Below are positions 27,247 to 55,200 of a stretch of DNA of 64,000 bases, piece after piece (within the stretch, counting starts at the first letter, position 1; each line of letters begins with the position of its first letter). Source of the stretch: Ophelia neglecta (lineage: Eukaryota). Made by a program: the position numbers and the translations under genes. The notes under the pieces are model-generated. The model ran no database searches. It saw only the letters and a program-made list of their open reading frames with translations, and was not told where the DNA came from. The stretch covers positions 141,608,001 through 141,672,000 of the forward strand of contig OZ260661.1 in the NCBI GenBank assembly GCA_965285935.1, in the 5' to 3' direction.

Positions 27247-29403
27247 TTAGTTCATCAGTCGACTTCCGAAATAAATGATAAAATATACTAAAGGAGTTAC
27301 AATCCAGAGCATTGGAATCACATATATATTTATAATATACGCGTAATATGTGGGGATGGAGATCTCGAGCAATGACATTAAAGACACTACTGTTATTGGA
27401 GACGATAGAATCACATCGACAGTAGTCTGCCGTACAAAGTTCACGAGAGGATTGGTCGCCTTCTTCGACATTCTCCCGCCAAGAGCCTTAACTGAGGAGG
27501 ACGAAAGAGTCATTATTTTATATATCTTCCACTGCAGTATACAGCATATTAATAGTGATATAAAGTGTATTGCCAGATAGCAGATTAGCAATGCCCTGCC
27601 TTGCAGCTGAGGTGCTGTTGGAGGAAAGAAAAACGAACAGTGCTCATTCAGATCAGAAACGGCCTCTAAAGAAAAGCTCCAAACATGGGTGGCTGCCACG
27701 ATAGCCAATAATGACGTCCACGTGATACCAACGTACACTGTAGTATGACGATCTGCCTTCAGAATGGCTGATTTGAAGAGTTTATTGCGCTGGTACATTG
27801 ATAAGAAGCTTATCGCTTTTGAAACAAATACAGAGCACATGACCAAATACTGGATATAACTGGCTAATACGCATAGCACATGACGGGTACCATAAGGATA
27901 ATAAATAGCTTCAACATCAAATAGCAATTCTCGGAAAGTGATGATTTGAATATACATTCCCAACACAATACCAGATATATTGAGAGACAGAACAGTCCGT
28001 TGCCTACTAAATAGAGGTGCGTCACTTTTCAGTTTTATCACAATAGCATTCAATGCCATAAGACATACAGAAAATACCGTGGCAGCTATAAGCTGGCCAA
28101 CCGTAAGTTCGCCTTCGCATAAGGAGGTAACAAGACATTTACTATTGTCAAACCAACAACAGAAATAGCCCACCTCTGGATAAATGCTGACATTAAACAT
28201 ATATTTAGAATTATATGCTTTTTTTATTGGATTATCCGAGAGGATGATTTTCTCTAAATTTGGAAACGGGATAAAAAGAGAAAAGTCAAAAATGGTCATT
28301 TCATTAAATGAAAGATCAATCAGCTTTACAGACGGCAAATTATGAAACGAATTTCTTTTGAGCTGATGTAAATTCATAGATCGGAAATTAAGACTTGCCA
28401 ACCTTAAAAGATTATTAAGTGCCAAATGCTTTATTTCATTGATTCGATTGCCTTTTAAGATGATTGATCGCAGATTATTAAGACTGTCGAATGCTCCCGT
28501 TCCTACAACTTCAATACTATTGTCCGACAAATCTATGACAGCCACATTTGGAACAGAAGAAAATACATTTGCCGATACATCAACAAATGAATTAGATGAC
28601 AGATCAAGAGACACTACATGGTCACCAAGGATAAATTTTGGAATAATGCGCTGGTTTCCAGAGATACGGACGGCTTTCAACAAATAAACGTTTATTGAGC
28701 CATAAACAGTCGCATTAACACATAGCATAGACATCCATTGGCAATCACAATTTTGGTTACACGTGACATTACAGAAAAACTCATCCTCTCCATATAAAGG
28801 ACACTCGACTTTGCCATCACAAATACTACTCTGTGGCAAACAAAAACCTCCTTTGCATTGAAAAAACCCAGGGCAGTTCAGATGCTGGCCACTAGGTGGA
28901 CACTCGAGCTCATCTTCCCCTTTTAAACAATGGAACTCCCCGTCACAAACAAGAAACAGCGGCAGACAATATGATTGAGGACACTTAAACCGCCCTGGAC
29001 ACTGAAATTTTTGACATTGCTTTAAGTGGTCGCCGTGTCTACAATGCATAATTTTTCCATATGGACCCAACTCATAGACACAGAGTCTGTTCAGCGGAAA
29101 ACACCTAGATGGAGGGTTTGAACATGGTATATATTTGTCAGAACTACAGTTGATTAGTCCCAATGACCGTAAAGGATCCCAAACAAATGTCTCGTCTGAT
29201 ATTCCACTACCTGTACAATCGGGTACTTGGTCGTCAACCCAATCCATTGGTATGCATGTATTGGTAGAACGACACAAAAATGAACCAATGCATAGCGGAT
29301 GGCCTGCGATAATTGAGGCGGGTATTGGATACTGTTGAATCGGCTGTTGCCCATCCATATTAAGAATGGGTAATGGTTCTGTTAGGAGCGGCTGTACACA
29401 GAG

Positions 29404-37700: not shown

Positions 37701-40608
37701 GTTTAACCCTCATCAAATACTAAAGTGGCCTTTTGCAGTCTTTTTAACAAAGTTTTCTTAGAAGGGTTTTCGTATTTGAAATATTACCAAACTATCTTAC
37801 CGATGAAACGTTCAGGCCTAAAAAGGTGCCCATCTTCGGTTGCAGGCGAGATGGACTTGGGAATGGCAATCGATTGGTTGCAAATCTGGCGCCCAGTATG
37901 AGGTTCTCTAGGATGGAGGTCTCTTCGGGGGTCGAAGCAGTCGGCAGATGGCCACCGGCAGATTTACAGCGCTCTTCTGCTTCCACCCATGATAGGCGCA
38001 TCGCCTCCCAGAGCACATAATGGACACTTGTTTTCTCTTTGCAACAATTTTTGTCTACAATTGTGTGATGATTATCGATTAGACCACGCAGAGGCACAAG
38101 AGGGTTAATATCCATGACCACTTTACACGAGGGGTCATAACTACAAGTTCCCTTGTATTTCGGTTCATAGAAGGAACTCGCTACGGTGACCCTGATACCA
38201 TATAAATTTAGAAATCGAAATTTTATGTTGAATGCGCTTTGTTTGTTCAATGAAACGAACCATTGGAAATATGCCGTTCCACCTCGTGTTTCCACCTCGG
38301 AACTATATCTAAATGGATATGTGTGCAACACGGCAAATCTAAGACACATGTTACTACAGTCTCCGGTATGCCTGAAAAAGATCTCGGTAACATTTCTGTA
38401 CATGGTGGCATATGAAAGCAACTCTTCGTTTGAAAGCCCGTCTTGAAGCTTTGACCTATATTGATAGTGAGATACAACTTTAGCCACATTAAAATGGCTC
38501 ATAGTTAAACGATGTTCAAGTTGCTTAAAGTGAAACACTGCATTTATGAATAATTCCTTAAATAATTGTGGATCCGCCATTTGATCTACCCACGATTCGT
38601 CTTCTAAGCTAAATGGGATGAAAAATACTTTTGTTCTGTTTCTTTTGGCGAACAGAGTGAAGGATTGACATCCGGGATGAATAGAGTAATGTTTGTCCTG
38701 ATTAATCTCCCTTGGCGTGTGACCAAAGAGGGCCTGGCATTCAGGAACTCTTTGGGTCCTTAGTTCTACACTTACGTCGACCACCTCGGACATATACCAA
38801 TGTGGGCTTACGCCAAGTTCGCACTCTTCTGTAGTTAGCCATTCGGTGAAAGTTGGTATGTATTGTAAAACCTGACATTCTACACCCGGATACACTTTTC
38901 CTGTATTTGAAGGGTGGTCTCCTTTCATTGTTATACAATTGTAGCCTTGAGAATAATTAATTACCCACCTGTTTTTGACATTTTGCTCTTTGTTACAAAT
39001 GCCATAAAAGAAGTCGCGTGAAAGCTGTATTTTGTCTTGTATATAAGCAACACCTAAGGTTGTCCCCTTCTCATAGCCTCTTACAGGCTTGCAGTAGACA
39101 AATTTGCCTTCACAGCGACTGGGAGTTATGTTGATGACGATATTCAGAAAACTACCAGGAATGGGAAAGAAATAGATGAAAATAGAAACCGCATAGAATG
39201 TACTCCGATACCTAGCCACCATTGGTTGTTTTGTGATTGACTCCCAAGTCCATATAGACTTACAGAACACTGTTGCTGGAAAAGACGATTGGAAAAGTTT
39301 ATTTGATGACCTTTGACCTATCGAGTTGGCCAAAATATATTGCCGCGACCCTTCATATATGGCTACTCCACGGTAACGACAGTCATCTGTATTAGGTCCG
39401 GCCACACCGAATTGCGTTATCTCTAAGTCTAAAAAGCTCCCCATTTCTGTTGGTATGAAATACGTACCGACACAGCATACACCGGGACAGTCTCGTATGC
39501 TGCTATAGTGCATGGCATTACCACTAATATCAAAGCAGGAAGCTGGAACATCAGGTTTGATTCTAACTTGAAATAATAGTTTTAATGTAAAGGGCCACTT
39601 AGAAACTGGACATGAACGTGAATGTTGAATTCCCATGGATATAATGAAGGCCGTTGATAGTCTGTAATGTATTTCATGGGAGGACATTCCTATTTTTCCA
39701 AGTTGTTCGGATACTAACTCCGGTCCATCCAATGCATTACTTTCAAAACAGGTGACATTGCCTATTAGCATTGCCTGAATCTGTTGGCTGTAATCAACTA
39801 GAATTGTAATCACGAAATGAAAATGTCTTTCATAAATTTGAGAATATGGAGCAATGTTATATTCTTGCATCGCTAGAACATCTCCTATTGTTTTGTAGTT
39901 GTTACTGAAGTGTGGTGTTCCGTGTAGTAAGTCATATTTAAGTTGGACATCTGTAACAAAGATCTGATAAACGATGGAGATTCCGCTGGCGATAGCTGTG
40001 GTATTGCCATTTTGCTTATGAATGGGAACAAAATCATTAACGTAGCTTAAATGCAGACGGTCTGTCTTAGTGTAAATGCTCTGTGGTACAAGGTGTCCGC
40101 AGTACACGGTTGTTATGTTATCACCTGATGTCGAAGTCCAATCCACAGTAAGCCTCTCCAGCAGACATCTGTGAACGGAATCCTCGAGTAAGAGGTGTAC
40201 AAATGTCAGGTTGACATTGAACGGTTCAAGGACTTTGATTCCCCAGAATGCTGATCCACCTGATTTCATTTTCTCCAAATGCACCACTCCACACGGCGAG
40301 TAGGGGTATACTCGTGAGACGCCCCCTGACGAGAAAGGGTACACCATAGAGGCGCCCCCTGTCGAGAGGGGGTAAGCTTTAGAGGATCGCCTCTCATAGG
40401 AACCCGTAAGGCAGTGAGATGTCGAACGCCGAATGTTGGATATGGTACGTACAACTGCTTCCGGAACACCAAAATCTGGTCTTAAAGAATAAAATGCCAG
40501 GCGCGAAACGTATTTTTCAACGTTTTTCTCCAAACCATCCACGCTAATATTAATTGTTATAAATAACACAAATCCGCAGCACAGGTTTTTTCCGAACATA
40601 TTGAGCAT
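31746..40608 (-). CDS. Giant GRL101-like LDLa/LRR GPCR with N-terminal CUB and C-type lectin domains (~2035 aa, 2 coding exons)
   Basis: Exon 40608-37801 (donor TCG|GTAAG, phase 0) joins exon 35045-31746 (TTACAG|ATG, phase 0). The join completes a C-type lectin fold (SWVEAEERC...GGHL...FLGLN|..WSTG...C..WYRISC). Other domains: signal peptide, CUB-like (NVNLTF...C..ERL...YCG), ~6 LDLa repeats (CDGxxxCxxGEDExxC), LRRs (LDLSSN, IDLSDN, ILKGN, IDLSFN, ILSDN) and 7 hydrophobic helices. Confidence 0.88.
35461..37185. repeat. 22-bp satellite (TAGGGGCATAACACAAACCTAA)n, ~78 copies
   Basis: Direct observation; fills most of the single intron of the GPCR gene. Confidence 0.97.
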
Positions 40609-41287
40609 TGAGAGTAATACACAACTTGTCTCCGGTGCTTTCTATCTCTAACGGAGAAAGAAGCCCCTGTGAAGACACCGAGAGCCAAAGTTGCCTTATA
40701 TAGGATTTCTTCAAAAACCACCATACTTTATTAAATATCCAGTGGAACCTTTGATTCCTGAGTGTTAGATTCGTCTAATCAATATTTGATCAAATGACTT
40801 TTGAGGCAGTTTAATGTCATTGAGTCGTATTTATTAAAGCTTTCAAACATTTATATTAACTGTAAACAGCATAAGAACTGTTCCAATGAAATTATACTCT
40901 CAATAAATGTCAGTGTGAAACAAAACATCAAGTTACTACATACAATAAAGATCCCTAAATCCAATAATGTGTGATATTGGGTTTAACATCTGACATTCTT
41001 TATGAGAGATGTGGCTATATATTCACCTTGATAAGTATTGCTGAATTACATCCGGAAGGTTTTTGGTCTCAATTTAAAATATCGTGATTCATTTTCAGTG
41101 GCGTCGAATGGTAAAATGTCTTTATAACCAGCAGTCCTGAACGAGTAAACCTTATCTTTGCACTTTTTTTAACTACATAATAATTATCTTGGGAAACTAT
41201 TATTCATAAGCGTTACTTATATATAAGAGTTCTTGTGATCTTAGTGAAATATGCTTGTGTGCTCTTATTACTTCTATTACTACCACC

Positions 41288-41570
41288 AAAGCGTGGCCGA
41301 ATGGTTAGGGCGTCCGCCTCGCAAGTGGGACATCGGGGTTCGAATCCCGGTCGCGTCAAACCCAAGACGTAAAAATAGGTACTGATAGGTCCCCTGCCAG
41401 GCGCCCGGTATTTCGGGGATAGTATCAGGACTGGTCAACCCGGTGTCAGTATAATGTGACTGGGTGGGGTTCCCTGTCTGGTGTCTACGGCAGGTACTCC
41501 AGTGAGGCAGGACTATAAAGAGGGCATTGAGCCCACTGTCACAAGTATGCACTGTGGCGATATGACCGAT
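41288..41570 (+). mobile_element. tRNA-derived SINE (V-SINE-like), 3' tail missing
   Basis: A box TGGCCGAATGG, B box GTTCGAATCC. High similarity to the reverse complement of 11300-11578. Confidence 0.9.
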
Positions 41571-42574
41571 ATGATGACGCACTGCCTAGCAATCTGTTCA
41601 GCCAGTAACATGATCCATATCAACATGCTTCTAATGCAGACTGGAGATTTCTTTAACAAGTTGCCAAACCGCTGCCCGATACTTTTTACTTGAATTATAG
41701 AAATAAAGGGAGCATTTGTTCGCTCTGTTTAGATAATACCATGTCATATACTGATCACATTTTATTAATATCACCTTAATATTTAGTAGCTTCCTATTTC
41801 GTTTTGCTAGCCGACTTCGTATTTCATTTACATACTTTCACTGGTGGAACAATGAAGCAGACTCAAGTGATTTACTAGTTCCTAGTTCCTAGTTCCTATT
41901 TCGAATTAGGAAATGAAACTCAAGCCATTTCCTTATTCCAGTTCCTAGTTCCTTATTCGAAATAAACCTACCAACCTAGATCTAAGCACACAATATCACT
42001 CTTTATGACCCCTAGTGATCATTTCTGCCCAAAAAGAATCAAAATCCGGCGGTTTTTGGCCCTTTTTCGCCCATTGAAAGTTGATGGGAAAGAGGCCGCC
42101 AGCCGAGTTGGCCTACCGGGCGCCGCCGGGAAGGCCTAGAGGTGGGAGGGGGTATAAAATTTGCGGGAAAAATCATGCAAAATTGGCCGTCTAGAAATGA
42201 TCCTGGGAGCGTGAAACGCATATAAAACACAAGTACCCATGGCAAAATTTTCTGGCCCACCATGAATTAGGAAATGGCACTCACCGATTCACTATTCTTT
42301 AATCGCCGAGAGTAAGTAAATATCCATTTTAAGAATTCCAGGCAACTTCCAGTAGCTTCTAATGATGACTTATCTTTCTTGGTGAACCTACCAGGTCATA
42401 TATGGCGATATTTTCACCATTATTTGCACATAGAAAACACAAAGTCGAACTAGGAACTAGGAACTAGGAAATGGCCAGTTCCTAGTTCGAATCGCCAGTT
42501 CCTTATTCAAAAAACGATTTAAAAAAAATCAATCTAAAAGTACCTGAATCAACCATGTTTCATCTCCATAGTAC

Positions 42575-43805
42575 ATTTCCGGCCCAAAAAACTTGAAATT
42601 CGGCGATTTTTGGCCCATTTCCGCCCATTGAAAATCAAAATCGAATAAGGAAATGGCCAAACTACGCGATCCACCCAAGACTTAAGGCCACCATTCAACT
42701 CTTAATTACCTCTAAAACGAATTTCTGACCAAAAAATTACGAAATTCGGCGATTTTTGGCCCGTCTTGCCCATTGAAAATAAAAATCGAATAAGGAAATG
42801 GCCAAACTACGCAGTCCACCCAAAATTTAAGGCCACCATTCAACTCTTAATGACCCCTAAAACGAATTTCCAGCCCAAAAATTACAAAATTCAGCGATTT
42901 TTGGCCCGTTTTTGTCCATTGAAAATCATAATCGAATAAGGAAATGGCCAAACTACGCAATCCACCCAAAATTTAAGGCCACCATTTAACTCTTAATTAC
43001 CTCTAAAACGAATTTCTGAACAAACAATTACAAAATTCAGCGATTTTTGGCCCGCTTTTGTCAATTGAAAATCATAATCGAATAAGAAAATGGCCAAACT
43101 ACGCAATCCTCCCAAAATTTAAGGCCACCATTCAACTCTTAATGACCTCTAAAACGAATTTCTGACCAAAAAATACACAATTCGGCGATTTTTGGCCCGT
43201 TTTTGCCCATTGAAAATCAAAATCGAATAAGGAAATGGCCAAACTACGCAATCCACCCATAATTTAAGGCCACCATTCAACTCTCCATAGCCCCTAGAAC
43301 AAATATCTGACCCAAAAATTACAAAATTCGGCAATTTTTGGGCCTATTTCGCCTATTGAAAATCAAAATCGATTAAAGGAATTGCCAAACTACACAATCC
43401 ACTCAAAATTTAAGGCCACCATTTTACTCTTAATGACCTCTAAAACAAATTTCTGACAAAAATATTACAAAATTCGGCGATTTTGGCCCGTTTTTGCCCA
43501 TTGAAAATCATAATCGAATAAGAAAATGGCCAAACTACGCAGTCCACCCAAAATTTAAGGCCACCATTCAACTCTTAATGACCTCTAAAACGAATTTCCA
43601 GCCCAAAAATTACAAAATTCAGCGATTTTTGGCCGTTTTTGTCCATTGAAAATCAAAATCGAATAAGGAAATGGCCAAACTACGCAATCCACCCAAAATC
43701 TAAGGCCACCATTCATTCAACTCTCCATGGCCCCTAGAACAATTTTCCAGCCCAAAAATTACAAAATTCGGCCAATTTTGGGCCTTTTTCGCCCATTGAA
43801 AGTCA
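42575..43805. repeat. 145-146-bp tandem array (~8.5 copies) in the left arm of the long-TIR element
   Basis: GAATAAGGAAATGGCCAAACT (some copies degenerate) recurs at 42643, 42788, 42934, 43080, 43225, 43371, 43516 and 43661. About 1.4 inverted copies are in the right arm (48996-49195). Confidence 0.95.
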
Positions 43806-45206
43806 TAAAAGTGCTTTAACGGTGGTGGATGCCTTTAGTGTTTAGCATATACCTTTTTGTTTGTTTCTAATTATAATTGAACATTCGTATTTGACCCTAC
43901 GTGTTACTCGAATGAAGGTTAAACATGTATGCGTTAAATCTTTATCAATACAACGACTATTAATTAACAGATCAATATCTTTTTAATACTTCAACATAGC
44001 AAAGCACGCGCCGCTATTAACGTGAACACCTCTATGTATACTGAGTCTAGTATGATTGGTGCCAATACTAATTATATCCTTATTTCTTATATTCTTGTTT
44101 TGTGTGTTTTAGAAAAGTGTGACAATATAGTTTTAAATAACTGGGCAAGTAATGCCGTTCATTGGTTTATGTTGAACACAGCGCAAGATGTTTTATGTGA
44201 CATATACTGTATATGTTTTGAAGCAAAATTAGTATTTACATTTGATAGGAATTTAGTTTTTATTACTGTCCCTATGATCCTTTGACAATGAAAAGTGACG
44301 ATTTCCAGTTACCAATAACTGCTTGAGAAATATTAACTACATTATCTTTACTATTTCTAAGACAAATCGAGACATTATTCTCAATAAAATCGTACGTTAG
44401 GCTATATAATAATGAATCTAAAATGATACAAGGAAATTTATTATGAATCAATGTATTATCCCTGATATAAAGAATGCAAAAATATATGTATTTATTATTA
44501 TGGCTTTTACAATACGCTTTGCTTTATGCAGGTAGTAAAGTGGTCATTTGTTAAAAAGAAGTTAACATATACCAGTTATCTTAATTTTACCGACTTTCAT
44601 TTCCATTTTGAGATAATCAGAATACAAAGGCAATCCACATTTTGTAAATCAAATAGTCCAATAATAAACGCCTTAAAAATTTGGCAATAAAACAGATTAA
44701 GCGTTGTTTTTACATTTACATCAATGACTGTCTGTTAATCTTAAGAGAATACAAGTCTACACAATGCCATTATAATCTGGCGCGATCAATGTTATTTGCA
44801 TCGGATAACAGCTTGAAATGTGTAAATCCATTTCGTGAAATTCTACACAGGCTATGAATACACAAGTACAAACCTTTGGAACTGCCTGGTGATTTGCACT
44901 GTAAGCTCTTGTAAACTAGGCAATGTAGGCGCTTTTATTTAATATGAATATTGGTTTCCTCACGGCAGATATCAGATGAATATTGTATGTTTTTCTTAGA
45001 AAGCAACTCTGGACTAAACAAATAAGTGTCCTATCCTGCTCATTTTACAAGAATGCCATTGACTGGTTTTATATAATAAAAAACCAGGTTCTCTTATAAT
45101 ATCTGTTATTTTGCTTAAATTCTTCTGCACGTGAACGTGAATCCTCGCTGTTCTTCTTTAAACGACAATTAAATCTGCGCACAAATTTCAATACATAATA
45201 TATAAT

Positions 45207-47127
45207 TTAAAGCTTAGCTTTATTTCTGTCCTGCTGCTGTTTCAATACGTGGGAGTAATCTTTGACTCTTTCTGTAGGCAGCACGGAAATAACTACATCA
45301 GTCCAGCCTAGTTTCTGTAGATACATGCTGTTTGGAATTATTCCAAGAGGTACGAAACCTCGCCGATTCTCCATGAGTCTCATCTTGGTATTTTGAATAG
45401 CAGAGTCACCTAGGTGGTATTTGTAACCCGCTTTCTTTGCCATACTTTGCAACACATCCATCATTTCACTGCCTACATGAAGGGATCGGTACTTTGGATT
45501 GACAAGCCCACTGGACTCGTTATACAAACCTTTGCATCCCCTGCTTATCCAGCTATCGCCGAAGGATGCAAACCCCATAATCTCACCTGATTTCACGTCC
45601 TCGATCACCATACAATGGTTGTGAAGCAACTGGAAATATTTGAATGTTTCAAAATTGGGATATTCATCTGTCCCAAAACCTGCATCTTTGCCAAGCAGAG
45701 ATGTAAACATATCAAACACCTTCGTGTCTTCCACTCCATCTTGTTTCAGATATCTCCAGATGCACTGTAGGCCACTTTCTAATGTGTAGTGGAATGGAAG
45801 GAATGGCAGGGTTGGTAACTTTGACATTTCCCTCTGGTTCAACCCTCCAAAGTAATTTTCAGTGTAACTTCGTATCTCTTCCATTGGCCGCAACTAGACA
45901 ATAATGTAATTAATTGAACGGGTTATATTAGTCATAAATAAGATTATCTTTCTTTATCAAATCAAAATAAATCCTTACCATTTTTTCCCCATCAATGTCT
46001 TTAACCAAACACCAAGTATCCACCATACCGTATTTAGTTACTTCGCCAAGATTTGGTAAACAACATACTGGTTGAAAGCCGTCTTTCCTAAGGTCGGCAA
46101 TAATTTCCGCGCATGTCTGAAATTAATTTACACTCAATATGAAACTGTAGTGTCGTTGCAATTTGTGATCCCGCCAGATATATCTTCTACCTTAGAGATG
46201 AGAGCACGAATGAGACAGAAATGATGCATCTAAGAAAGGTACCTTGATGTATTGAATCAAAGCTTGTCCGTTCAGGGTTATGAACACACACAATGCTACT
46301 CAACTATTGACATAAATAAGCACACGCCATTACCTGGAAGACCCAGACTAGGGCCGTAGTATACGCCAGTTGTAAATCTTTGGCATACCGAAGGCCTTGC
46401 CCTATAACCTCTCTGTACATATTCTGTCCAAAGAGGGAATCCGACAGAAAAACGTGCACGTGTGCCACACAGGGGGCAACGGACCTTGCGAGTTGACATG
46501 GCTGTATGAATAATGCGCCGTCTACCATATTAAGTGATAAGTTATTGCCTGACATCTGCCGAATGGAAAATCCCTCCGCCTGTTCCAGTGAGTCCTTGAA
46601 GCTGGGAAGGTCAGGGTATTCGTGAAGACCGACATTCCTACCCGTTCGAGCGGACTCTTGGACAATTGAATAAACATTGATAGCCTCTGCCTCCTTTAGG
46701 TACTCAAATTGCAACACGGCGTCCTTTAATTATTATGAAGTACTGGTCAATCAATGTAAAAAAAGCAACAATTGTGGTTAATGGACATAAACAAAATATA
46801 ATGATGGTATCAGTTTTCTTTATCTGAGCTGAAGGAATTTTCATTGGTGCGAATTCCGTCTTAAGTAAAAGTTCATTCATATCTGCTATAGAATTATTCT
46901 GTGGAAAATCATTGGCATTACTTCTTTCGAGTTTATTTGTGTTAGTAAGTTGGGTTTGATCAAAACCTATTATTATTCCACAATGGTGATCAAGTTATTA
47001 CCAGTAAATATGTTTCGGTGATGCTGGGCTGAGATAGTAACAAATAACCAATACGCACCTTTATATATACCTTCTCTGGGAGGTAGTCCAATCGTTTTGC
47101 CGGATAGTAGTTTGCCGTCCGGTACAT
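45207..47127 (-). CDS. Tandem-GNAT N-acetyltransferase, MPR1-like (~427 aa), C-terminal PTS1 (AKL)
   Basis: Exons 47127-47059, 46723-46334, 46116-45979 and 45893-45207 are all phase 0, GT-AG and stop-free. The two halves are homologous (GxxEYP..F; GFxPxxxxPN...GxxD). The second half has an acetyl-CoA motif A (VNPKYRSLHVG). A possible upstream coding exon 48832-48802 could splice to 47189. Confidence 0.85.
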
Positions 47128-48923
47128 TCTGGCAGGGACAAAACTGTGGGACACACTAAGCCTACTCCTATTCCTGACCAACGCAAAAACTAAGTATTGT
47201 TTACTACACTTGGTATGATCTTGTATTTTACAGGTGACTTTATCGATTGTGCACGGACTTTGCCTAAGGCCGTGCACAATCGAATGTGGAAATCAGTTGA
47301 AGGTGTCTGCCAACATTGATATCTGAAGTACAAGCAGCTACATATATGTATACTTGTACTATCACCCCCTCAAACCTCACACTGATTTAATATGGCTTTA
47401 AAGCACACATATCCTAGTTTAATGGGTCATGTTTAACGTCATGTTGGCTTGAATTGTATAATGTTTGTCACCATATGTATTGTACTGTTAAAAGGTATGT
47501 TTGTTCCTATTAATTCACGAAATGATATATTAGTTCAGCCACAATGACATGGAATGTTCTCAAATGTATACACGACAATTAACATACCACGTTTCAGCTA
47601 TTGGCCGCCTGATAAGGCAAGGATCATTAAGGTTAATGTGTTATCAAGAGATAATAGAAGGTTGCAAACAAAATACGCTTCATTGTTGTTATGAACCAGC
47701 GTGTTTGTTTTCAATATACAATAACCCGGAGGTCACACACCAACCACCTTCGGACTGACACCTCTCGTTAATGGGACAAGTATGATAGAGGTGTATTAAC
47801 TGATAAATACACTGTTTAATTGTACATGGTGCACGGGAACTTTTACGGTAACATTTAATGTTATTTCCTGATTTGAAACAAATGACCAAGAAACCGAGAG
47901 AGTTACCAAATGCCGACGTATATCGAGGTATCCTAAGGTTTCACCTCGGTATCTGGTCGGTTTTCAATTATTTTTATCGCGCACAACGACTGCGGTATTA
48001 CGGCGGAACTTTCACGGCATGTCTACGGTATTTTCTGCCTTATTTTCTAGGTATTACTTCGTAACACACGTAATAACAAGACCCTTAAATCAACCCTTAA
48101 CAAAATTAACACACGTAATGACAAGACCCTTAAATTAACACCAAACAAAATAAAACTCTGCAGTAGTATCATATGACATCACAATACACACTACAGAGAC
48201 AGTTGTCAGCTTAGACACTCTTAACAAGCTCACCCTGTAAGGCTTTTAAGCAAACATTATGACGCGCCACATAGTTCAATGTTGGAATCGGCTGATATAT
48301 CATCTGTGTTTGCAAAAGCTTAATGCTATTCATTTAACAGGGAATAGAACCAACGAATAAAACATGATTATCTATATTCTAACTGCATTTCAGCTGGATG
48401 TTTGGAAGTTACAATACAATGCCAAAGTTTATTTGGCCTCACGATTGCTAGCCTTGAACAAACTTAGTATATGTTTTTCAACACCCATTCCTCTCATTAA
48501 TTAAGTCTGAATCTGACGAATTCAAAACATGACGAATATAATCCACGATTAGTTGTGATAGTATTGGAACTTTTTAGCGTTTACATATGATGATATGATC
48601 AATTTGAATATATTATAGTTAAATATGAAATACACGCCGGAGTATGTTATATATACATAAGTAAATATATAAACACGAGAGAATCCCGGTTATAGATAAG
48701 TGACAGCTGGGAATAGCTTTCAGGAGTGTAACGTGGTGTTCGGGACAAACCTAAAATTACCATTGAGTTGAGTTGATGTGTCATCGAATATACGATCTTA
48801 CCTTGTACAATGTTCCTGCTTTCATTGAACATGTGACATGGTTATATGGGGGATACGTCTGTTTATCTTGTTAATTCCCTTTTAACGCTCATTTGCTTCA
48901 TCGAACGTTCACCATAAGTAAAC

Positions 48924-48980
48924 TGCGCATGTATTATACATCTACGATATAACTGTTTCCCCATTCGAGTGCGCATGCGC
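48924..48980. promoter_or_regulatory. NRF1-type motifs, candidate promoter of the GNAT gene
   Basis: TGCGCATGCGC at 48970-48980 and TGCGCATG at 48924-48931, ~100-150 bp upstream of the candidate first exon (donor CAAG|GTAAG at 48802). Confidence 0.45.
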
Positions 48981-50684
48981 GTGAACGGGTGAGACATTCG
49001 ATTTTGATTTTCAATGGACGGAAATGGGCCAAAAATCGCCGAATTTTGTAATTTTTGGGTCAGATATTTGTTTTAGGGGCCATGGAGAGTTGAATGGTGG
49101 CCTTAAATTTTGGGTGGATTGCGTAGTTTGGCCATTTCCTTATTAGATTTTGATTTTCAATGGGCGGAAATGGGCCAAAAATCGCCGAATTTCTTTTTTT
49201 GCCGGAAATGTACTTTGGAGATGAAACATGGTTGATTCAGGTACTTTTAGAGTGATTTTTTTTAACCGTTTTTTGAATAAGGAACTGGGGATTCGAACTA
49301 GGAACTGACCATTTCCTAGTTCCTAGTTCCTAGTTCGACTTTGTGTTTTCAATGTGCAAATAATGGTGAAAAATCGCGTTGTCTTTGTGTCTAATGACCT
49401 GGTAGGTATACCAGGAAAGATAAGTCATCATTAGAAGCTACTGGAAGTTACCTGGAATTCTTAAAATGGATATTTACTTACTCTCGGCGATTAAAGAATA
49501 GTGAATCGGTGAGTGCCATTTCCTAATTCATGGTGGGCCAGAAAATTTTGCCATGGGTACTTGTGTTTTATAGGCGTTTCACGCTCCCAGGATCATTTCT
49601 AGAAGGCCAATTTTGCATGTTTTTTCCCGCAAATTTTATACCCCCTCCGACCTCTAGTCCTTCCCGGCGGCGCCCGGTAGGCTAACATGGCTGGCGGTCT
49701 CTTTCCCCTCAACTTTCAATGGGCGTAAAAGGGCCAAAAACCGCCGGATTTTGATTCTTGTTGGGCAGAAATGATCACTAGGGGTCATAAAGAGTGATAT
49801 TGTGTGCTTAGATCTAGGTTGGTAGGTTTATTTCGAATAAGGAACTAGGAACTGGAATAAGGAAATGGCTTGAGTTTCATTTCCTAATTCGAAATAGGAA
49901 CTAGGAATTAGGAACTAGTAAATCACTTGAGTCTGCTGAACAAAGCCAGGAAAATGCGTTGTTTACCGCCCTACCGGATAGAATAGATAACCGCTTCCGC
50001 TACCTCCCCCTTCGCCGATTGGTAAAAGCCTATAAAACTTCGGGCAAACAGCGTGTTTCAAGTCTGCCTATGACAAGTTTGCATAGGTTGTCAACTTTTG
50101 GTCCAAACAGACGTTCAAAGCTGCTAAGTGGCATAACAACTGGCCGTGGAAAACGTATGTATTTCTTTATCTTTTTATCCAAGTAGTCGTATCCAGTAAA
50201 ACTAGGTGACCTGACTACGTAGTAAAGTGTGCATCTTATTATTATATGGTCAGATACACACAGTAAACTGCAATCATGATGCTAGCTGGCTAGATCGGGA
50301 ATTTACGTTTAGTTAGGGTTATGTGTTGAAGTGTAAACAACTGAGTCATGTGAATACCAGTTGACATAGAGCTTTGCTGTACCGTTGCGGTTCATGGTAC
50401 GAGCTTGACACAGGGAAGTCTTGGCGCACGGGATTTTTCAATACATTGTGCATTGTGCGGGAGGTTTTTCCTGGGTTCGTGTAGAAGTGCGCCATATTGA
50501 TTACCTGAGATTTACATCAAATTGTCTTTCCTCCTCAGTGTACAAGTACAGTATATTGTTATTTATTGATCATTCTTAGGTGCTTAAGGTCGCCTATATG
50601 AGTTAGAGTATTGAATGTTGATCAGTCCATTTTGTAGCGTTACTGCATGGGAATTTCCCCATACACACATGACAGTTATCAGCT

Positions 50685-50913
50685 GGGCCCGGTTTCTTGA
50701 AGGGGCATTAGGTTTTTTTGGATTAGATTTACCTATTACCGATTAGGTGAGACCAGTCAATCGGTGTTTCCAATGTCCAGGATTAAGTTCGAAATCGAAA
50801 TGTCCAGGTTTCCGACCAAATCATGCTTCCAGACAAATACCGACCAGCAAGTCAACACCGATAAAACATTTAAATCCGATTAAGAATTTAGACTGCTTCG
50901 AGAAACCTGGCCC
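50685..50913. mobile_element. PIF/Harbinger-like MITE
   Basis: TIRs GGGCCCGGTTTCTTGAAG / CTTCGAGAAACCTGGCCC. Confidence 0.65.
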
Positions 50914-50948
50914 TAATGTTCAGGTCAAACCATTAGTTTTGGGATGAG

Positions 50949-51287
50949 CCCCGGGAGGAGGGGGGGGCACTTGGCTACCAAGTTGGGTAAGGATGTGCAG
51001 CCCAGGTCTAGGGGTCATAGTCAACAAGAGAGTAAAATTTAACTTTAAAGGGTCATCGAAAGAGAAATTTGGGGAGGTACTTACCTTACCAAGGCCCAGT
51101 ATCGGGGATAAAAAATTAGGGCCGTGGAATAAGGGTCATTTTGAGAGAAAAAAACAACTTTCAAGCGGTCATCCAGAGAGAAAACGTTGAAAAAAAGGGG
51201 TCATTGAGAGAGAAAATGTAGGGAAAAAAGGGTCATTTGGGCGGCACATACCCGTATACCTATATACAGTAAGTGCCCACCCCGGGG
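50949..51287. mobile_element. MITE with CCCCGGG termini
   Basis: TIRs CCCCGGG...GGGCACTT / AAGTGCCCACCCCGGGG. The direct repeat GATGAG (up to GGGATGAG) flanks both sides. Confidence 0.78.
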
Positions 51288-51693
51288 GATGAGGCTGTTT
51301 TTATTACATTTTCGTTAAAACGGCAGAGGGCAGACGATATTTTCGCCGATGGTTAGCCTCAAGAAAGGCCTCTGCCTAGCCTACACGGACACCTACATAC
51401 CTGGAGTGATTACTTAACTAACAGGCCAGCTATTTGGGTAGGTACGGATGGTTACGGGCCAGAGCTTGTGGCTTCTACTGGTTCTGATAGCTGTGATAAG
51501 ACTTAAAGCAGTTTACTGGTATATTTGACACGAGACGTGCAGTCTTCACTGCATATGCACGTGAGATAATGTCTATTTATATATAACTATTTAAACTCTA
51601 CAAAACTTCTTTATGGCCCAATGGTAGACACACGGAAAGGTGGACACGGAAAACCTTGACGAGGGTTACGTGATGCAAGATAATAATATAAGG

Positions 51694-51882
51694 AGCTGTG
51701 TGTTAACAGCGAAAGCGACAGGTGCGGCGAAAGCAGCATCGGTAGAAGAATAATCTATAATATCCGTCATTTATAACCCACCCTTACCCAAACATCTCGG
51801 ATTTGTTCTTGATACAAGGGGGAAAGGTTGAGGTTATTATTGTGATCATACTAGCTCTCGCTTTCGCCGTTAACACAAAGCT
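51694..51882. mobile_element. MITE with 8-bp TSD
   Basis: 28-bp TIRs AGCTGTGTGTTAACAGCGAAAGCGACAG / CTCTCGCTTTCGCCGTTAACACAAAGCT. TSD ATATAAGG at 51686-51693 and 51883-51890. Confidence 0.87.
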
Positions 51883-52292
51883 ATATAAGGTGTGTTAGCC
51901 AGTGCTGTAGTGGGTAAGGGTAGGTCGAAGTGATAAGTTCGAAATGTAATAGTTAGGAACTATAACTGACTCTTCCGTAACTTAAAAATATAATGGGCGG
52001 ATACCCGACAGACCAATAGTCTTATAGTCCATTAAACGGGGTCAAAATCATCAGGTTCCTCCGGCTGCAGGTCCACGAAAGTTTATCCAACGTTTCCTAT
52101 CTAAATATAATCTAATGAAAATAGTAATTAGAAAAACAAATTGCAATCACTTGCGATGAGAGGTAGTTCAAAGGTTTTCCATGGATGAAGTCAACGCACA
52201 AATTAAACGAGGTATGTTTTACGTAGCATTTAGATGCATTAATAATTTGAGACACCATTCTACAAGATGATACAATAGTTTTCAGGACAAAA

Positions 52293-55200
52293 ATGCTTCG
52301 ACTCTACAACAGTCTTCAATGCAATTTGGGCGATATTAGAATTGCTATAGTGGATGGAGCCCCAGCCAGAGGTGAGACATTTCCCATGAGAAACTTGGTA
52401 TCTGATGGCGTCCCCTCCAGGGATGTGACGAATCCCACCGGAAGAGTAGTATCTGATGGAGTCACATCCAGGGATGTGACGAATCCCACCGGAAGAGTAG
52501 TATCTGATGGAGTCCCATCCAGGGATGTGACCAATCCCACCGGAAGAGTAGTATCTGATGGAGTCCCATCCAGGGATGTGACAAATCCCACCAGAAGAGT
52601 AGTATCTGATGGGGTCCCAGCCAAGGGTTTGACTTATCAAACGCGAACGACGGTATCTGATGGAGCCCAAGCCAATGGTTTGACAAATCCCAGGGAAGGC
52701 ATGGCGCCTGCTGGTAAGCAAAAAATAACTTGTGTACTTTAAGCAGTTGATTGAAGAACAATGCTGTCATGTACAACCTATATACAACATAAAACTAATT
52801 TGCTTTAAAGATATCAATTTTAACATTATGGATTGGAAAAGGGCCAAGGGCTTAAAAAGGCACACTCCAAGAAAATAAAAATAATTTGTCCTGCCAGTCA
52901 ACCAAAACAAAAACGTTTCCTTTTATAATGTTTGATAGGTTAACAAACTCAAAAGTCTTTGGTAACTGTTACCGCATTGTTGCGCAGTTGCTTGTCATAT
53001 ACCACTTTGCCTATTTGTACTATGCAGCTGATTCGGGATGATTTCTGATCGTTTAAATGGACTATGCTTGATTAGTGGTTATGCGGTGTTAAATTTATTT
53101 AAGCGTGGCTCATGTGCCATGCTGAGACACAGGGAAGGCACTGGGTGTAAAAAAACGACTTGATGATGTGTTTCGGTTTGCCTGCAAATATAACTTTAAA
53201 CGTCATGCACGTTTGTACCACACTTTCTTTCATTGTATCATGTCTTTAGAGATTAAGCTACAAGAAATTGAACTTTAATTTTAGTACAGTTATAGTAAGA
53301 GGTGTTACCACGTTAAGCTTATGGTTGACTATATTTGTATAAACAAATTGTACAGTACCTGCGTTGTTTTTGTTTATATGACAAGCAACAAAGTAAGGCT
53401 TCATTTGACACGTGTTATAAGTTAATGCTGAACACTTGACGGTCATACCATTTATGACATTCTACGGACACGTTTACAATTACCTCGAAAAACCTTAAAA
53501 TAAGAATATATTTTTTGATTTTCCAATTGCCCTATAAATTATGCTACTTAACCTAACCTAGAGGTACGCATATATGTTTGCATGCAAGTATGTTGTTTAA
53601 GTGTATATCTGATCATTTTATACTTATGTTTTAATAATTGACAGATCTGATCAGGATCTCACAGGGCTATGGTGTGGGTGATTCAAGGTGCAGTGGGCTA
53701 CACATGACACTGGGATCAATGGAACTTCAGCTGGAGCTTGGTGACATCACAAAGGAAACGACTGATGCTATAGTTAACAGCACAAACCCAACAATAGATC
53801 TCTCCATGGGTAAAGGGTCGTTAATCGATCATTGGCATATTACATTGGCTTCTGGTTACTATTTATATCCAGCACTTCCTTCTCGAATATACACCATTGG
53901 TTGAAGCCAGTGAGATAGTACAGACTCAAATTTGAGCATATTTCGATTCGGATAACTGTACCAAGAAATGTCTTTAAAGAATAATTTTGTTTTTTTATTT
54001 CTGTAACTGATAACAGTGTCACTATATTCCAATTGCATCAGCCAATCTAATTGGAATGACAATAAAGGTGAAAAAGGGCCAAACTATTTCCAATATTTTT
54101 GTTTTTCTGTGTTTTCTATAGGTGGTGTTGCAAACGCCTTAGTTAAAACAGGAGGTACCCAGTTTGTTAACGAATGCAAGAAAGCGGGTAAGAACTTGCC
54201 CCTCGTAAACTAAAGATATGTGTTAATTACTCGGCGTTAAGGTGAAAAAGAAGCTCACCATGGTACAGAATTTGATAAATATATCATTCCTCTATCAATA
54301 TGTTTCTCATTAAAGCGATGGTGGGCAATATTGCAGTCACGAGCGGCGGGAACCTTAGAGCCCAGGTCATCCACATTGCAGCTCCGTCGTGTGCAAATCA
54401 ATGGAAAACGGTGAACAATTTTATATCCAAATGCATATGTATAAAAATATATACGTAGGGAATACCCGGCAGACAAAGGGAGTCATTAATCGAGTATATT
54501 AGATAAGTAATTGATTTTTACTCTTACCAAAAAGTAAAAGTAACAATTCACGTGTGTGCAGTCAATGCGCAGAAGTGAGATATTTCTTAGTATTCTTAGT
54601 ATTCAAAGAACTGTAGTGTTAATAAATATTGGATGTTCAAACTTCAGGGACAAAAAGAACAAACGTAACATGAAGAAGGTTACTTTAATTGCAAAGAAAT
54701 TACTGATTAATTTTTATGAATAATAACTTGAGGGTAATATTTAATAATTTGCATTTATTTAGGTGCTCAAGCAATCATTAAAAGAGGCAGAGCGCTTGGG
54801 GTTTAGGTCTGTCACATTCCCTGCTTTGGGTACAGGTATGTTTGTACAAGCTCTGGCGCTCTTATATAACATGATGTGGGTGTTGCCAGTCCTTATAGTC
54901 TTGTTAGTATACTTTACACCTAGAAACTGATGATAGACTACTATATTTGAAAATGTATTGTTTACAGGGGCGGATCCAAGAATTTCCAAGGGGGGGGGGA
55001 GCATGTGGAGGAATTGAAAAGCGGGGGTGTGTGTGGGGGGTGGTCACCGAAGTTACATACATACGTCTAGTTGCCTATGTTTTGGGCGCCTGTTGGGGGT
55101 GTAGATGGGCTTGTTCAGAGTAAAAAAATGAGGTGGGGGGGGGGGGCAGGATCCGCCCTTGGTTTATTACGATGAGTTCCAACACAATGTGTACCAAAAC

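What the first reader, a model, noticed from the sequence alone, without database searches (positions are those of the whole stretch)
41857..49936. Pack-type long-TIR transposon carrying a complete, spliced MPR1-like acetyltransferase gene
Seen: two ~940-bp arms in inverted orientation end in identical GCAGACTCAAGTGATTTACTAG termini, with the same 4-mer TGAA outside each end. Each arm lacks a terminus at its inner end, so they behave as the two TIRs of one 8080-bp element rather than two separate insertions. Between them there is no transposase, but there is an intact intron-containing tandem-GNAT gene, with candidate promoter motifs abutting the right arm and an AATAAA (- strand, ~44934) downstream of the stop. 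Established: gene capture by TIR elements (Pack-MULEs, Pack-CACTA) is common in plants and sparsely documented in animals, and mostly involves gene fragments. Inference: this may be a DNA-transposon vehicle that mobilises a whole detoxification/metabolic gene. I cannot assign the superfamily; a 4-bp TSD fits Sola, Academ, Chapaev or Ginger.
Basis: partly seen in the sequence, partly recalled or inferred. Interest (0 to 1): 0.88.

Follow-up and report, generated by a model that had tools for sequence, protein, structure and literature searches.

The report
Foldback transposon carrying a whole acetyltransferase gene
A non-autonomous foldback-type Mutator-like DNA transposon in an invertebrate-like genome holds, between its two long inverted arms, a DNA copy of a complete four-exon acetyltransferase gene whose parent lies 14.4 Mb away; this kind of capture is known (Pack-MULE) but rarely involves a whole intact gene in animals.

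Summary
The structure is real. Window 41856-49937 is one 8082-bp element. Its two arms end in the same AGCAGACTC... terminus and belong to a family with about 495 termini in this 762-Mb genome.

The base next to GCAG is A in all 30 loci read, so it belongs to the terminus. In 24 paired copies the target-site duplication (TSD) is 9 bp (sometimes 10); here it is GAACAATGA/GAACAAAGC, 7 of 9. With roughly 740-bp arms plus inner 146-bp tandem arrays, this points to a Foldback/FB4-like Mutator element, not Sola, Academ, Chapaev or Ginger.

The 5187 bp between the arms (43809-48995) duplicates C1:127289678-127294837. The similarity stops exactly at both arm ends, and that locus has no arms.

The cargo holds a complete 427-codon tandem-GNAT gene with four exons and 1.9 kb upstream. 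Both copies are intact (dN/dS 0.38; no indels in coding sequence against 35 outside it).

This is a Pack-MULE-type capture of a whole gene. There is one copy only, so movement with the cargo is not shown. No RNA data exist, and no autonomous partner was linked. It is a new member of a known kind, of moderate interest.

The parts
41847..41855 (.). left copy of the 9-bp target-site duplication, GAACAATGA
   Evidence: 7 of 9 identical to 49938-49946. In mismatched left/right pairs of 24 family copies, 7 or more of 9 occurred in 1 of 552.
41856..42574 (+). left arm, non-repetitive part of the long TIR; the terminus is AGCAGACTCAAGTGATTTACTAG and the subterminal region has GGAACTAGGAA-type short repeats
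   Evidence: It differs from the family consensus by 4.8% and shares 6 private substitutions with the right arm.
42575..43808 (+). left inner array, 8.4 units of a 145-146-bp tandem repeat (part of the arm)
   Evidence: The same repeat lies inside other family copies.
43809..48995 (-). cargo: a 5187-bp DNA-level duplicate of G000:C1:127289678-127294837
   Evidence: blastn identity 91.7% and 89.1% (gaps counted) across the whole segment; similarity ends exactly at both arm boundaries, and junctions are blunt. Only two close copies exist in the genome.
47128..48995 (-). 1.87 kb upstream of the start codon, duplicated with the gene (presumed promoter and 5' UTR; function not shown)
   Evidence: 93.8% identical to the parental locus, with a 119-bp indel after 48627. 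No RNA data.
47059..47127 (-). exon 1, ATG plus 22 codons (MYRTANYYPAKRLDYLPEKVYIK), donor GT at 47058-47057
   Evidence: Residues 2-23 align at 68% to the equivalent exon of a foreign contig, L064, and resemble the N-terminus of own-genome paralogue L033.
46334..46723 (-). exon 2, 130 codons, first (degenerate) GNAT-like domain
   Evidence: AG/GT splice sites are kept in both copies.
45979..46116 (-). exon 3, 46 codons, end of the first domain
   Evidence: Protein sequence is identical in the two copies.
45207..45893 (-). exon 4, 228 codons plus stop; second GNAT domain; C-terminus ...NKAKL
   Evidence: PF00583 at 26.9 bits, cut-off 20.7. Model pLDDT 90.5 with GNAT fold; Mpr1, YncA, PAT and ArsN are the top matches. 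The family consensus ends in SKL.
44935..44943 (-). ATTAAATAAA polyadenylation-signal-like motif, 263 nt after the stop
   Evidence: The parental copy keeps ATTAAA at this position.
48996..49200 (-). right inner array, 1.4 units of the 146-bp repeat in inverted orientation
   Evidence: Its inner end lies within a few bp of the unit position where the family's own 1.2-kb core joins the array.
49201..49937 (-). right arm, non-repetitive part of the long TIR, ending ...CTAGTAAATCACTTGAGTCTGCT
   Evidence: It differs from the consensus by 3.5%.
49938..49946 (.). right copy of the 9-bp target-site duplication, GAACAAAGC

Best explanation
Window 41856-49937 is a single non-autonomous, Foldback/FB4-like member of the Mutator superfamily. 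It has long arms (about 740 bp plus inner 146-bp arrays) and a 9-bp target-site duplication. Its centre holds a DNA-level duplicate of a complete host gene, which makes it a Pack-MULE in the strict sense.

The parental gene lies at C1:127.29 Mb on the same chromosome. The 5187 bp that were copied carry four exons, three introns, 1.9 kb of upstream sequence and 1.4 kb of downstream sequence.

The most likely origin (inferred, not shown) is a break at or near the centre of the palindromic element, repaired by copying an ectopic template. This is the gap-filling route that Tan et al. 2021 infer for single-copy animal Pack-TIRs. Under this route the cargo may never have moved with the arms.

The captured gene encodes a 427-residue tandem GNAT-fold protein with a peroxisomal-type C-terminus (AKL). 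It appears to have stayed functional since the duplication.
For: One element:
- Exactly two outward-facing termini lie in the window.
- The 9-bp flanks match at 7 of 9; the empirical chance is 1 in 552.
- The two arms share 6 substitutions seen in none of 42 other arms.

Family and superfamily:
- 260 forward and 235 reverse termini in the genome, against 0 in the reversed-pattern control.
- TSDs in 24 pairs: 9 bp perfect in 11, 10 bp in 4, 8 of 9 in 2, 7 of 9 in 2.
- FB4 (9-10-bp TSD, about 700-bp TIRs) and Tm1 (FB-like TIRs, 8-10-bp TSD, Phantom MULE transposase) are published precedents (PMC8277862, PMC3169594).
- Genes with FLYWCH and MULE domains in one frame are present in several copies in this genome.

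Capture:
- Cargo similarity to C1:127.29 Mb ends exactly at both arm boundaries.
- That locus has no arms, no inverted repeats and no arm relics.
- It does have a relic of the same gene lineage 635 bp outside the duplicated block, so it is the older home.

Gap filling:
- Single copy on the same chromosome as the parent.
- Both breakpoints lie in the central arrays within about 6 bp of the same unit position, where the family's own core sits.

Gene:
- The four-exon model is confirmed by a foreign contig with the same exon structure.
- Both copies are open with all splice sites kept.
- dN/dS is 0.38, p=0.008.
- There are 0 indels in 1284 coding columns against 35 in 4047 non-coding ones; P is about 0.004 even if only one copy were drifting.
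- GNAT fold.
Against: - No RNA run holds the region, so expression of either copy is unknown.
- Both junctions are blunt, with no microhomology. About a third of published Pack-TIRs are like this, but it gives no positive support for template switching.
- The parent is 14.4 Mb away, not within the 15 kb typical of gap-filled cases.
- The arms differ from each other by 4.4%, against 6.1% for cargo versus parent in non-coding sequence. Taken at face value this would put the insertion after the capture and favour transposition of the composite, but p=0.08 and arm-to-arm conversion could explain it.
- No transposase-bearing copy with these termini was found, so assignment to the Mutator superfamily rests on TSD length and arm architecture alone.
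- No sister species or second haplotype could be examined.
- The read data come from the sample that was assembled, are contigs only, and showed no listed piece bridging an arm-cargo junction.
Confidence: 0.58

Rival explanations
1. Capture happened elsewhere, at or near another copy of the element, and the composite of arms plus gene then transposed as a unit into this site, making the 9-bp duplication. This is a true gene-carrying vehicle, as the first reader proposed and as inferred for Ssk-FB4 in Drosophila.
For: - The family was recently active: some copies have identical arms, perfect TSDs and 0.6-2% divergence from consensus.
- An 8-kb size is within the range of mobile copies with perfect TSDs, up to 9.1 kb.
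- The parent is distal (14.4 Mb), as for multicopy, transposition-derived Pack-TIRs in PMC8277862.
- Arm-to-arm divergence (4.4%) is lower than cargo-to-parent divergence (6.1%), as expected if insertion followed capture.
Against: - Only one copy of arms plus cargo exists, so no second TSD documents a move.
- The divergence contrast is not significant (p=0.08).
- The TSD itself has 2 differences in 9, which suggests an old insertion.
- No intermediate donor site is known.
Confidence: 0.28
2. The direction is reversed. The copy between the arms is the older one, and the armless copy at C1:127.29 Mb was derived from it by an unrelated DNA duplication whose ends happen to coincide with the arm boundaries.
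For: At the three differing residues where outgroups agree (D61, F87 and the C-terminal L of exon 4), the window copy keeps the outgroup state and the other copy is changed. The window copy also keeps the canonical AKL ending, against AKI.
Against: - It needs both ends of an independent duplication to fall exactly on the two arm-cargo junctions.
- The other locus carries an old relic of the same gene lineage just outside the block, which the window locus lacks.
- Retained ancestral residues show constraint, not age.
Confidence: 0.05
3. The structure is not a capture. It is either two independent truncated insertions that happen to bracket a duplicated segment, or a mobile element of another kind (such as a Helitron) nested in a foldback copy, or an assembly chimera.
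For: - Nested insertions are common in this family: a LINE in L044, a Pao LTR element in L062 and a LINE ORF1 in L008.
- Some terminus pairs lack a TSD.
- The only read data are contigs from the assembled sample.
Against: - The TSD matches at 7 of 9, and the arms share 6 private substitutions.
- The cargo has no LTRs or TIRs, no Helitron ends (no 5' TC or 3' CTRR, not between A and T) and no TSD of its own, and it occurs only twice in the genome.
- The cargo is covered at ordinary depth, with no joint skipping it.
Confidence: 0.04

Closest known systems
Ssk-FB4 of Drosophila melanogaster, a Pack-MULE built on the Foldback element FB4 (Tan et al. 2021, PMC8277862)
   Same: Non-autonomous foldback-type element with about 700-bp TIRs and 9-10-bp TSDs. 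Host gene sequence with introns lies between the arms. The captured copy encodes a protein.
   Different: Ssk-FB4 is multicopy and polymorphic, with three distinct TSDs that prove transposition, and it lost the 3' end of the gene. Here there is one fixed-looking copy, and the whole gene with both flanks is present. Movement and expression are not shown.
Single-copy Pack-TIRs of animal reference genomes (370 in 100 species; PMC8277862)
   Same: Single copy, parent on the same chromosome, breakpoints in the interior of the element; best explained by repair synthesis (gap filling) rather than transposition.
   Different: Those are mostly hAT and Tc/mariner elements carrying fragments, and no Pack-MULE was found among them. 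Their parents are usually within 15 kb, and two thirds show microhomology. Here the element is Mutator/Foldback-like, the cargo is a complete gene, the parent is 14.4 Mb away and the junctions are blunt.
Plant Pack-MULEs (rice, maize, Arabidopsis)
   Same: Long TIRs, 9-10-bp TSD, no transposase, host DNA between the TIRs.
   Different: From general knowledge of the field, plant Pack-MULEs are numerous, often multicopy, and mostly carry gene fragments or chimeras of several genes. This one carries a single whole gene and is unique in its genome.
Tm1 Mutator/Foldback family of root-knot nematodes (PMC3169594)
   Same: Composite TIRs of variable length built partly of tandem repeats; 8-10 bp (mostly 9 bp) TSDs; many MITE-like non-autonomous copies; one copy encloses a gene (Cg-1).
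   Different: Tm1 repeats are 13-15 bp units at the TIR and an element encoding a FLYWCH-MULE transposase was identified. Here the units are 146 bp and lie inward of a 720-bp unique arm, and no autonomous copy has been linked.
Yeast Mpr1 and the bacterial PAT / YncA(MnaT) / ArsN amino-acid-analogue N-acetyltransferases
   Same: The second domain of the cargo protein has the same GNAT fold: Foldseek E about 1e-9, TM 0.56-0.63; Mpr1 covers 203-209 of 228 residues. Weak sequence hits to PA4866, YncA and ArsN1.
   Different: Sequence identity is only 15-22%. The protein is a tandem of two GNAT-like domains, the first lacking the acetyl-CoA loop motif (read by eye). The usual RxxGxG/A loop reads RSLHVGS in the second domain. 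The C-terminus is peroxisomal-type. The substrate is unknown.

Membership tests
Pack-MULE / Pack-TIR (transposon-captured host sequence) | Both ends are TIRs of one repeated TIR-transposon family | tested here: met
   The arms match at least 40 scored full-length copies at 92-94%. There are 495 termini genome-wide and exactly two outward-facing termini here.
Pack-MULE / Pack-TIR (transposon-captured host sequence) | Flanked by a target-site duplication of the family's length | tested here: met
   9-bp flanks match at 7 of 9 (GAACAATGA/GAACAAAGC). The family norm is 9-10 bp and the empirical null is 1 in 552. The duplication is degenerate, not perfect.
Pack-MULE / Pack-TIR (transposon-captured host sequence) | The interior is non-transposon DNA with a parental copy elsewhere that lacks the TIRs | tested here: met
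   43809-48995 matches C1:127289678-127294837 at 91.7% and 89.1% (blastn, gaps counted). Boundaries are exact, and no arms or relics occur there.
Pack-MULE / Pack-TIR (transposon-captured host sequence) | No transposase inside | tested here: met
   Of the interior ORFs scanned against Pfam, only GNAT gave a hit.
Pack-MULE / Pack-TIR (transposon-captured host sequence) | The composite has transposed (several copies with different TSDs) | tested here: not met
   Only one copy with arms exists. This is not required for single-copy Pack-TIRs as defined in PMC8277862.
Mutator superfamily, Foldback/FB4/Phantom-like group | TSD of 8-11 bp, typically 9 | tested here: met
   11 perfect 9-bp and 4 perfect 10-bp TSDs among 24 pairs.
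Mutator superfamily, Foldback/FB4/Phantom-like group | Long, composite TIRs containing tandem repeats; variable element length | tested here: met
   A unique arm of about 720 bp plus 146-bp arrays of 1 to more than 20 units. Elements range from 1.85 to 9.1 kb.
Mutator superfamily, Foldback/FB4/Phantom-like group | An autonomous partner with the same termini encodes a MULE-domain (DDE) transposase | tested here: inconclusive
   The genome has 78 MULE-domain hits, and several lie in one frame with a FLYWCH domain. None lies inside the terminus pairs listed for C1 and part of C2. No more genome sequence could be fetched.
   The terminal A/T belongs to the element in all 30 loci, and the family TSD is 9-10 bp. 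TGAA/TGAA arises from overlap of the terminus base with the degenerate 9-mer.
Helitron (alternative gene-capturing element for the 5.2-kb cargo) | 5' TC and 3' CTRR ends with a 3' hairpin; insertion between A and T; no TSD | tested here: not met
   Cargo ends are AAGTGC... and ...GGTGAGAC. Flanks are A|...|A here and C|...|G at the other locus. Only two copies exist.
GNAT acetyltransferase superfamily (cargo protein) | Pfam PF00583 above its cut-off, and a GNAT fold | tested here: met
   Exon 4 scores 26.9 bits against a cut-off of 20.7. The model has pLDDT 90.5, and all 500 counted PDB matches have E <= 0.001, with every listed top match a GNAT-type acetyltransferase. Exon 2 alone gives no Pfam hit; it aligns to the first domains of family members.
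Mpr1 family (yeast azetidine-2-carboxylate / P5C N-acetyltransferase) | Sequence-level family membership and shared substrate-binding residues | tested here: inconclusive
   By fold it is the second-best match, with TM 0.61 over 208 columns at 17% identity. No sequence-level hit to Mpr1 was found. Active-site residues were not compared.

The most novel reading that the evidence does not exclude
A recently active Foldback/Mutator family in an animal genome has picked up a whole, promoter-bearing gene and carried it 14 Mb as a unit. The transposon-borne copy, not the parent, is now the better-kept functional copy: it retains the ancestral residues and the canonical AKL peroxisomal signal, while the parent has AKI. 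This would be functional gene relocation by a DNA transposon in an animal.
Probability: 0.22. Interest if true: 0.72.

Novelty: new member of a known kind. Interest (0 to 1): 0.5.

Why it matters
Capture of host DNA by cut-and-paste transposons is well documented in plants. In animals it is known mainly as small fragments inside hAT and mariner relics. A survey of 100 animal reference genomes found no Pack-MULE at all, and only the polymorphic Ssk-FB4 of flies (PMC8277862).

Here a foldback-type Mutator element holds an entire four-exon gene with its flanks, and both gene copies show purifying selection. That makes it a clean natural case for two questions: can DNA transposons duplicate whole working genes in animals, and by which route (repair at a palindrome centre, or transposition)? 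The family is young and abundant (about 250 elements, some with identical arms), so the genome may hold further captures and an active transposase.

The finding is not a new principle, and expression and mobility are untested.

Tried and rejected
- **4-bp TSD and the Sola/Academ/Chapaev/Ginger shortlist.** Rejected.
- **Helitron or other nested mobile element as the cargo.** Rejected on its ends, copy number and lack of repeats.
- **Autonomous partner.** Large ORFs inside other copies turned out to be a nested LINE (L044), a Pao LTR retrotransposon (L062) and a LINE ORF1-like coiled-coil protein (L008). Only coordinates could then be compared. No MULE hit lies within the terminus pairs listed for C1 and part of C2. 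The pattern listing shows only 100 of 495 termini, and longer exact patterns would not shorten it enough.
- **Naming the organism.** A word-indexed search with exon 4 found nothing. A search with the LDLa-LRR ORF was run at too strict a threshold and found nothing. The only named tandem-GNAT relatives are annelid (Owenia, Capitella), at 25-27% identity, so the phylum is not established.
- **Expression.** No RNA run holds the stretch. The single read-laying run gave only short contigs of the assembled sample. The cargo has ordinary depth and the arms very high depth; no joint skips the cargo and no listed piece bridges a junction. This neither verifies nor questions the assembly.
- **Polarising the 16 amino-acid differences with outgroups.** Most sites are too variable. 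Only three are informative, and all three favour the window copy as conservative.
- **Dating insertion against capture.** Arm-to-arm divergence is 4.4% and cargo-to-parent 6.1%, with p=0.08, which is not decisive.
- **Microhomology at the junctions.** None.
- **Earlier notes of the scan.** Nothing on this place or family.
- **Joined protein left out.** Exons were searched one by one by reference, dN/dS was summed over exon-wise codon pairs in a script, and only the exon-4 domain was folded.

Full report
**Observation**

The inverted arms exist. 41856-42399 pairs with 49394-49937 at 97% over 544 nt, and further arm and array matches continue inward (sequence). The 23-nt terminus AGCAGACTCAAGTGATTTACTAG occurs exactly twice in the 64-kb window, at 41856 (+) and 49937 (-), facing outward; shuffled sequence gives none.

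After about 720 bp of unique arm it carries 8.4 units of a 145-146-bp tandem repeat, up to 43808. The right arm has 1.4 units (48996-49200) and then the unique arm.

**The family and its target-site duplication**

- The arm is a repeat of the window's own genome (762 Mb, 223 contigs; the window is C1:141608001-141672000). A search with 744 bp of arm gave 984 first-look candidates, and the 40 that were scored are 92-94% identical.
- The first 30 nt occur 260 times forward and 235 times reverse with up to 3 mismatches, against 0 for the reversed control. That is about 250 elements.
- In all 30 loci read, the base outside GCAGACTC is A, and T at the other end, so it belongs to the terminus.
- I cut out 20 + / - terminus pairs 1.8-9.1 kb apart and added three seen earlier plus the window. 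The flanks are a perfect 9-bp duplication in 11, a perfect 10-bp one in 4, 8 of 9 in 2, 7 of 9 in 2 (one of them the window: GAACAATGA at 41847-41855, GAACAAAGC at 49938-49946), and unrelated or poor in 5.
- Among 552 deliberately mismatched left/right flank pairs, only one reached 7 of 9.

A 9-10-bp duplication with long composite arms containing tandem repeats is the pattern of Drosophila FB4. Tan et al. state that FB4, with 9 to 10-bp TSDs and about 700-bp TIRs, more likely belongs to MULE (PMC8277862). It is also the pattern of the nematode Tm1 family, which has FB-like TIRs, 8-10-bp TSDs and a Phantom-type FLYWCH-MULE transposase (PMC3169594).

**One element, not two**

- The flanks match as described above.
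- The two arms share 13 differences from the family consensus, and 6 of these are found in none of the other 42 arms sampled. WIN_R is the nearest relative of WIN_L.
- Neither arm has an inner terminus.

**What other copies contain**

- Most of the sampled copies are arm, array, a 1.2-kb non-coding core, array, arm. The core alone has 208 first-look candidates in the genome.
- The short copies (1.85-2.05 kb) are little more than two arms.
- Large ORFs in other copies are nested retroelements: a LINE in L044, a Pao LTR element in L062 and a LINE ORF1-like protein in L008.
- None of the 22 interiors examined holds a transposase, and none but the window holds a host gene.
- Typical arms differ from the consensus by 0.6-2.4%, and some copies have identical arms. 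The window's arms differ by 3.5% and 4.8%, so this is an older member of a family that was active recently.

**The cargo**

- A protein search of the genome with the last exon found one close relative (96% identical, open) at C1:127291111-127291794, 14.4 Mb away on the same chromosome, and about 20 distant family members at 22-31%.
- Over 20 kb around that copy, similarity to window 36000-56000 covers exactly 43809-48995 and nothing else, at 91.7% over 4957 columns and 89.1% over the last 258 (blastn, gaps counted).
- At both ends the similarity stops at the very base where arm sequence starts. There is no shared base across either junction.
- The other locus has no inverted repeats around the segment and no arm or array relic above chance.
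- It does have a 57-residue relic of this same gene lineage 635 bp beyond the end of the shared block, in the opposite orientation (45.6% identity, E=6e-9; other family members do not hit it). The window locus has nothing like it outside its arms.

I therefore take C1:127.29 Mb as the parental locus and the window copy as the derived one.

The cargo has no LTRs, TIRs or Helitron ends.

**The gene (- strand)**

| Exon | Coordinates | Content |
|---|---|---|
| 1 | 47127-47059 | ATG plus 22 codons |
| 2 | 46723-46334 | 130 codons |
| 3 | 46116-45979 | 46 codons |
| 4 | 45893-45207 | 228 codons plus stop |

- This gives 427 codons with GT/AG at all three introns.
- The short first exon was found by likeness to the N-terminus of an own-genome paralogue.
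- The whole model was then confirmed independently. A foreign contig (L064, ENA) carries two tandem copies of a gene whose four exons match at 68%, 48%, 63% and 44% identity in the same order.
- Named relatives with the same two-domain length (406-445 residues) come from the annelids Owenia and Capitella, at 25-27% identity. The host phylum is otherwise not established.
- Exon 4 passes the Pfam GNAT cut-off.
- Its predicted structure (pLDDT 90.5) is a GNAT fold. The best solved matches are a Kribbella GNAT, yeast Mpr1 (TM 0.61 over 208 columns) and the YncA / PA4866 / PAT / ArsN group that acetylates amino acids and their analogues. Weak sequence hits agree.
- The first domain lacks the acetyl-CoA loop motif, in this gene and in its paralogue (read from the sequences).
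- The protein ends in AKL and the family consensus ends in SKL. From established knowledge this is a type-1 peroxisomal targeting signal. The parental copy ends in AKI.

**State of the two copies**

- All four exons are open in both, and all six splice dinucleotides are kept.
- Counting substitutions only, identity is 97.8% in coding sequence, 93.2-93.8% in the flanks and 94.6-98.8% in the introns.
- Summed over exon-wise codon pairs, dN is 0.0166, dS is 0.0433 and dN/dS is 0.38, with fewer replacement changes than neutral expectation (p=0.008).
- There are 35 indel events in 4047 non-coding columns and none in 1284 coding columns. If even one copy were drifting, about 5.5 would be expected (P about 0.004).

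So both copies seem to have been kept. At the three differing residues where outgroups agree, the window copy has the outgroup state.

No RNA run holds the region, so expression is untested.

**How it arose**

The two arm-cargo breakpoints lie in the inner arrays at nearly the same position of the 146-bp unit (...GAAAGTCATAA| on the left...GAAAATCAAAATCGAAT| on the right, read inward). This is within a few bases of where the family's own core meets the array in canonical copies (...GAAAATCAAAATCAAA|). The cargo therefore sits at the centre of the palindrome, in the place of the core.

Tan et al. found that single-copy animal Pack-TIRs are best explained by a break inside a resident element filled from an ectopic template. 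Such cases have breakpoints biased to the interior, and the parent is usually on the same chromosome. A single copy, a same-chromosome parent and central breakpoints fit that route here. From established knowledge, a palindrome centre is also a natural break site.

Three things weigh against that route or leave it open:
- The junctions are blunt.
- The parent is far away.
- The arms differ from each other a little less (4.4%) than cargo from parent (6.1%; p=0.08). If real, that would mean the insertion came after the capture, so the composite moved.

I rate in-situ filling somewhat above transposition of the composite. Only an outgroup or a population sample can decide.

**Partner transposase**

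The genome holds 78 MULE-domain matches. At many of them a FLYWCH domain lies 0.4-0.7 kb upstream on the same strand, several in one open frame of 420-613 codons and in near-identical copies. So Phantom-type Mutator transposases are present. None could be tied to these termini, because no further genome sequence could be fetched.

**Read data**

The three runs that hold the stretch are contigs from one sample, probably the assembled one. The cargo has ordinary depth and the arms very high depth. No joint skips the cargo, and no listed piece bridges a junction. This is no independent check of the assembly.

**Verdict**

This is a real Pack-type element. The phenomenon is known. The case is unusual for animals in its superfamily and in the completeness of the gene. 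Mobility of the composite, expression and the autonomous partner remain open.

Noticed in passing
window 45207-45221 (C-terminus of exon 4); L042 111-794: The cargo protein ends in AKL and the family consensus ends in SKL, a peroxisomal targeting signal type 1 pattern. The parental copy ends in AKI. This suggests a peroxisomal tandem-GNAT family in which the transposon-borne copy has the better signal.
   Followed up: partly
L064 1793-3503 and 5224-6612 (ENA contig ctg21764_3x_l of ERZ25069296): A foreign contig carries two tandem copies of the same four-exon tandem-GNAT gene (37-68% identity per exon) next to a LINE. It has no similarity to the transposon arms. It confirms the exon model and shows that the family duplicates in tandem elsewhere.
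   Followed up: partly
G000 C1:56051209-56063033; C5:8175494-8255118; C2:47736439-47759840: Distant members of the same GNAT family (25-31% identity) sit in tandem clusters of three or four genes, each with two large exons. This is a lineage-specific expansion.
   Followed up: no
L041+L042 joined 14472-14642 (G000 C1:127295472-127295642, + strand): A relic of the last 57 residues of this same gene lineage (45.6% identity, with stops) lies 635 bp upstream of the parental copy in the opposite orientation.
   Followed up: yes
L041 6714-8041: About three units of a tandem repeat with a period of roughly 450 bp lie 640 bp beyond the 3' end of the parental block.
   Followed up: no
window 27247-29358 and 31746-35045 (- strand): Two neighbouring long single-exon ORFs (703 and 1099 aa) have LDL-receptor class A and leucine-rich repeat domains. 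They look like tandem paralogues resembling the ectodomains of LGR/relaxin-receptor-type proteins.
   Followed up: no
window 37792-40608 (- strand); 55928-56479 (+ strand): The nearest long ORFs either side of the element are a 938-aa ORF with a CUB domain on the left and an ORF with a weak RhoGEF match on the right. The element lies between them.
   Followed up: no
window 6522-9971 (- strand): A 1149-aa ORF with endonuclease and reverse-transcriptase domains: an apparently intact LINE.
   Followed up: no
L062 511-6408; L044 4229-7361; L008 2426-3721: Other copies of the foldback family carry nested retroelements: a 1966-aa open Pao/BEL polyprotein, a LINE, and a LINE ORF1-like protein. In L062 the insertion lies 88 bp inside the terminus, yet the host element keeps a perfect 9-bp TSD.
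   Followed up: partly
G000 C3:495833-496684, C7:22041804-22042655, C8:45474014-45474865, C1:78550693-78551544, C7:97123425-97124240: FLYWCH and MULE domains lie in one open frame of 420-613 codons, some in near-identical copies. These are candidate active Phantom-type Mutator transposases.
   Followed up: partly
L043 (G000 C1:132679860-132685291): A young copy has 99% identical arms but only 5 of 9 matching flank bases (GTATTGTAT / GTATTAGCA). Four other terminus pairs have no TSD. These may reflect recombination between copies or flank deletions.
   Followed up: no
window 48062-48151; 51163-51237: There is a 45-bp tandem duplication inside the cargo's upstream region and a 32-bp tandem repeat (2.3 copies) outside the element.
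   Followed up: no
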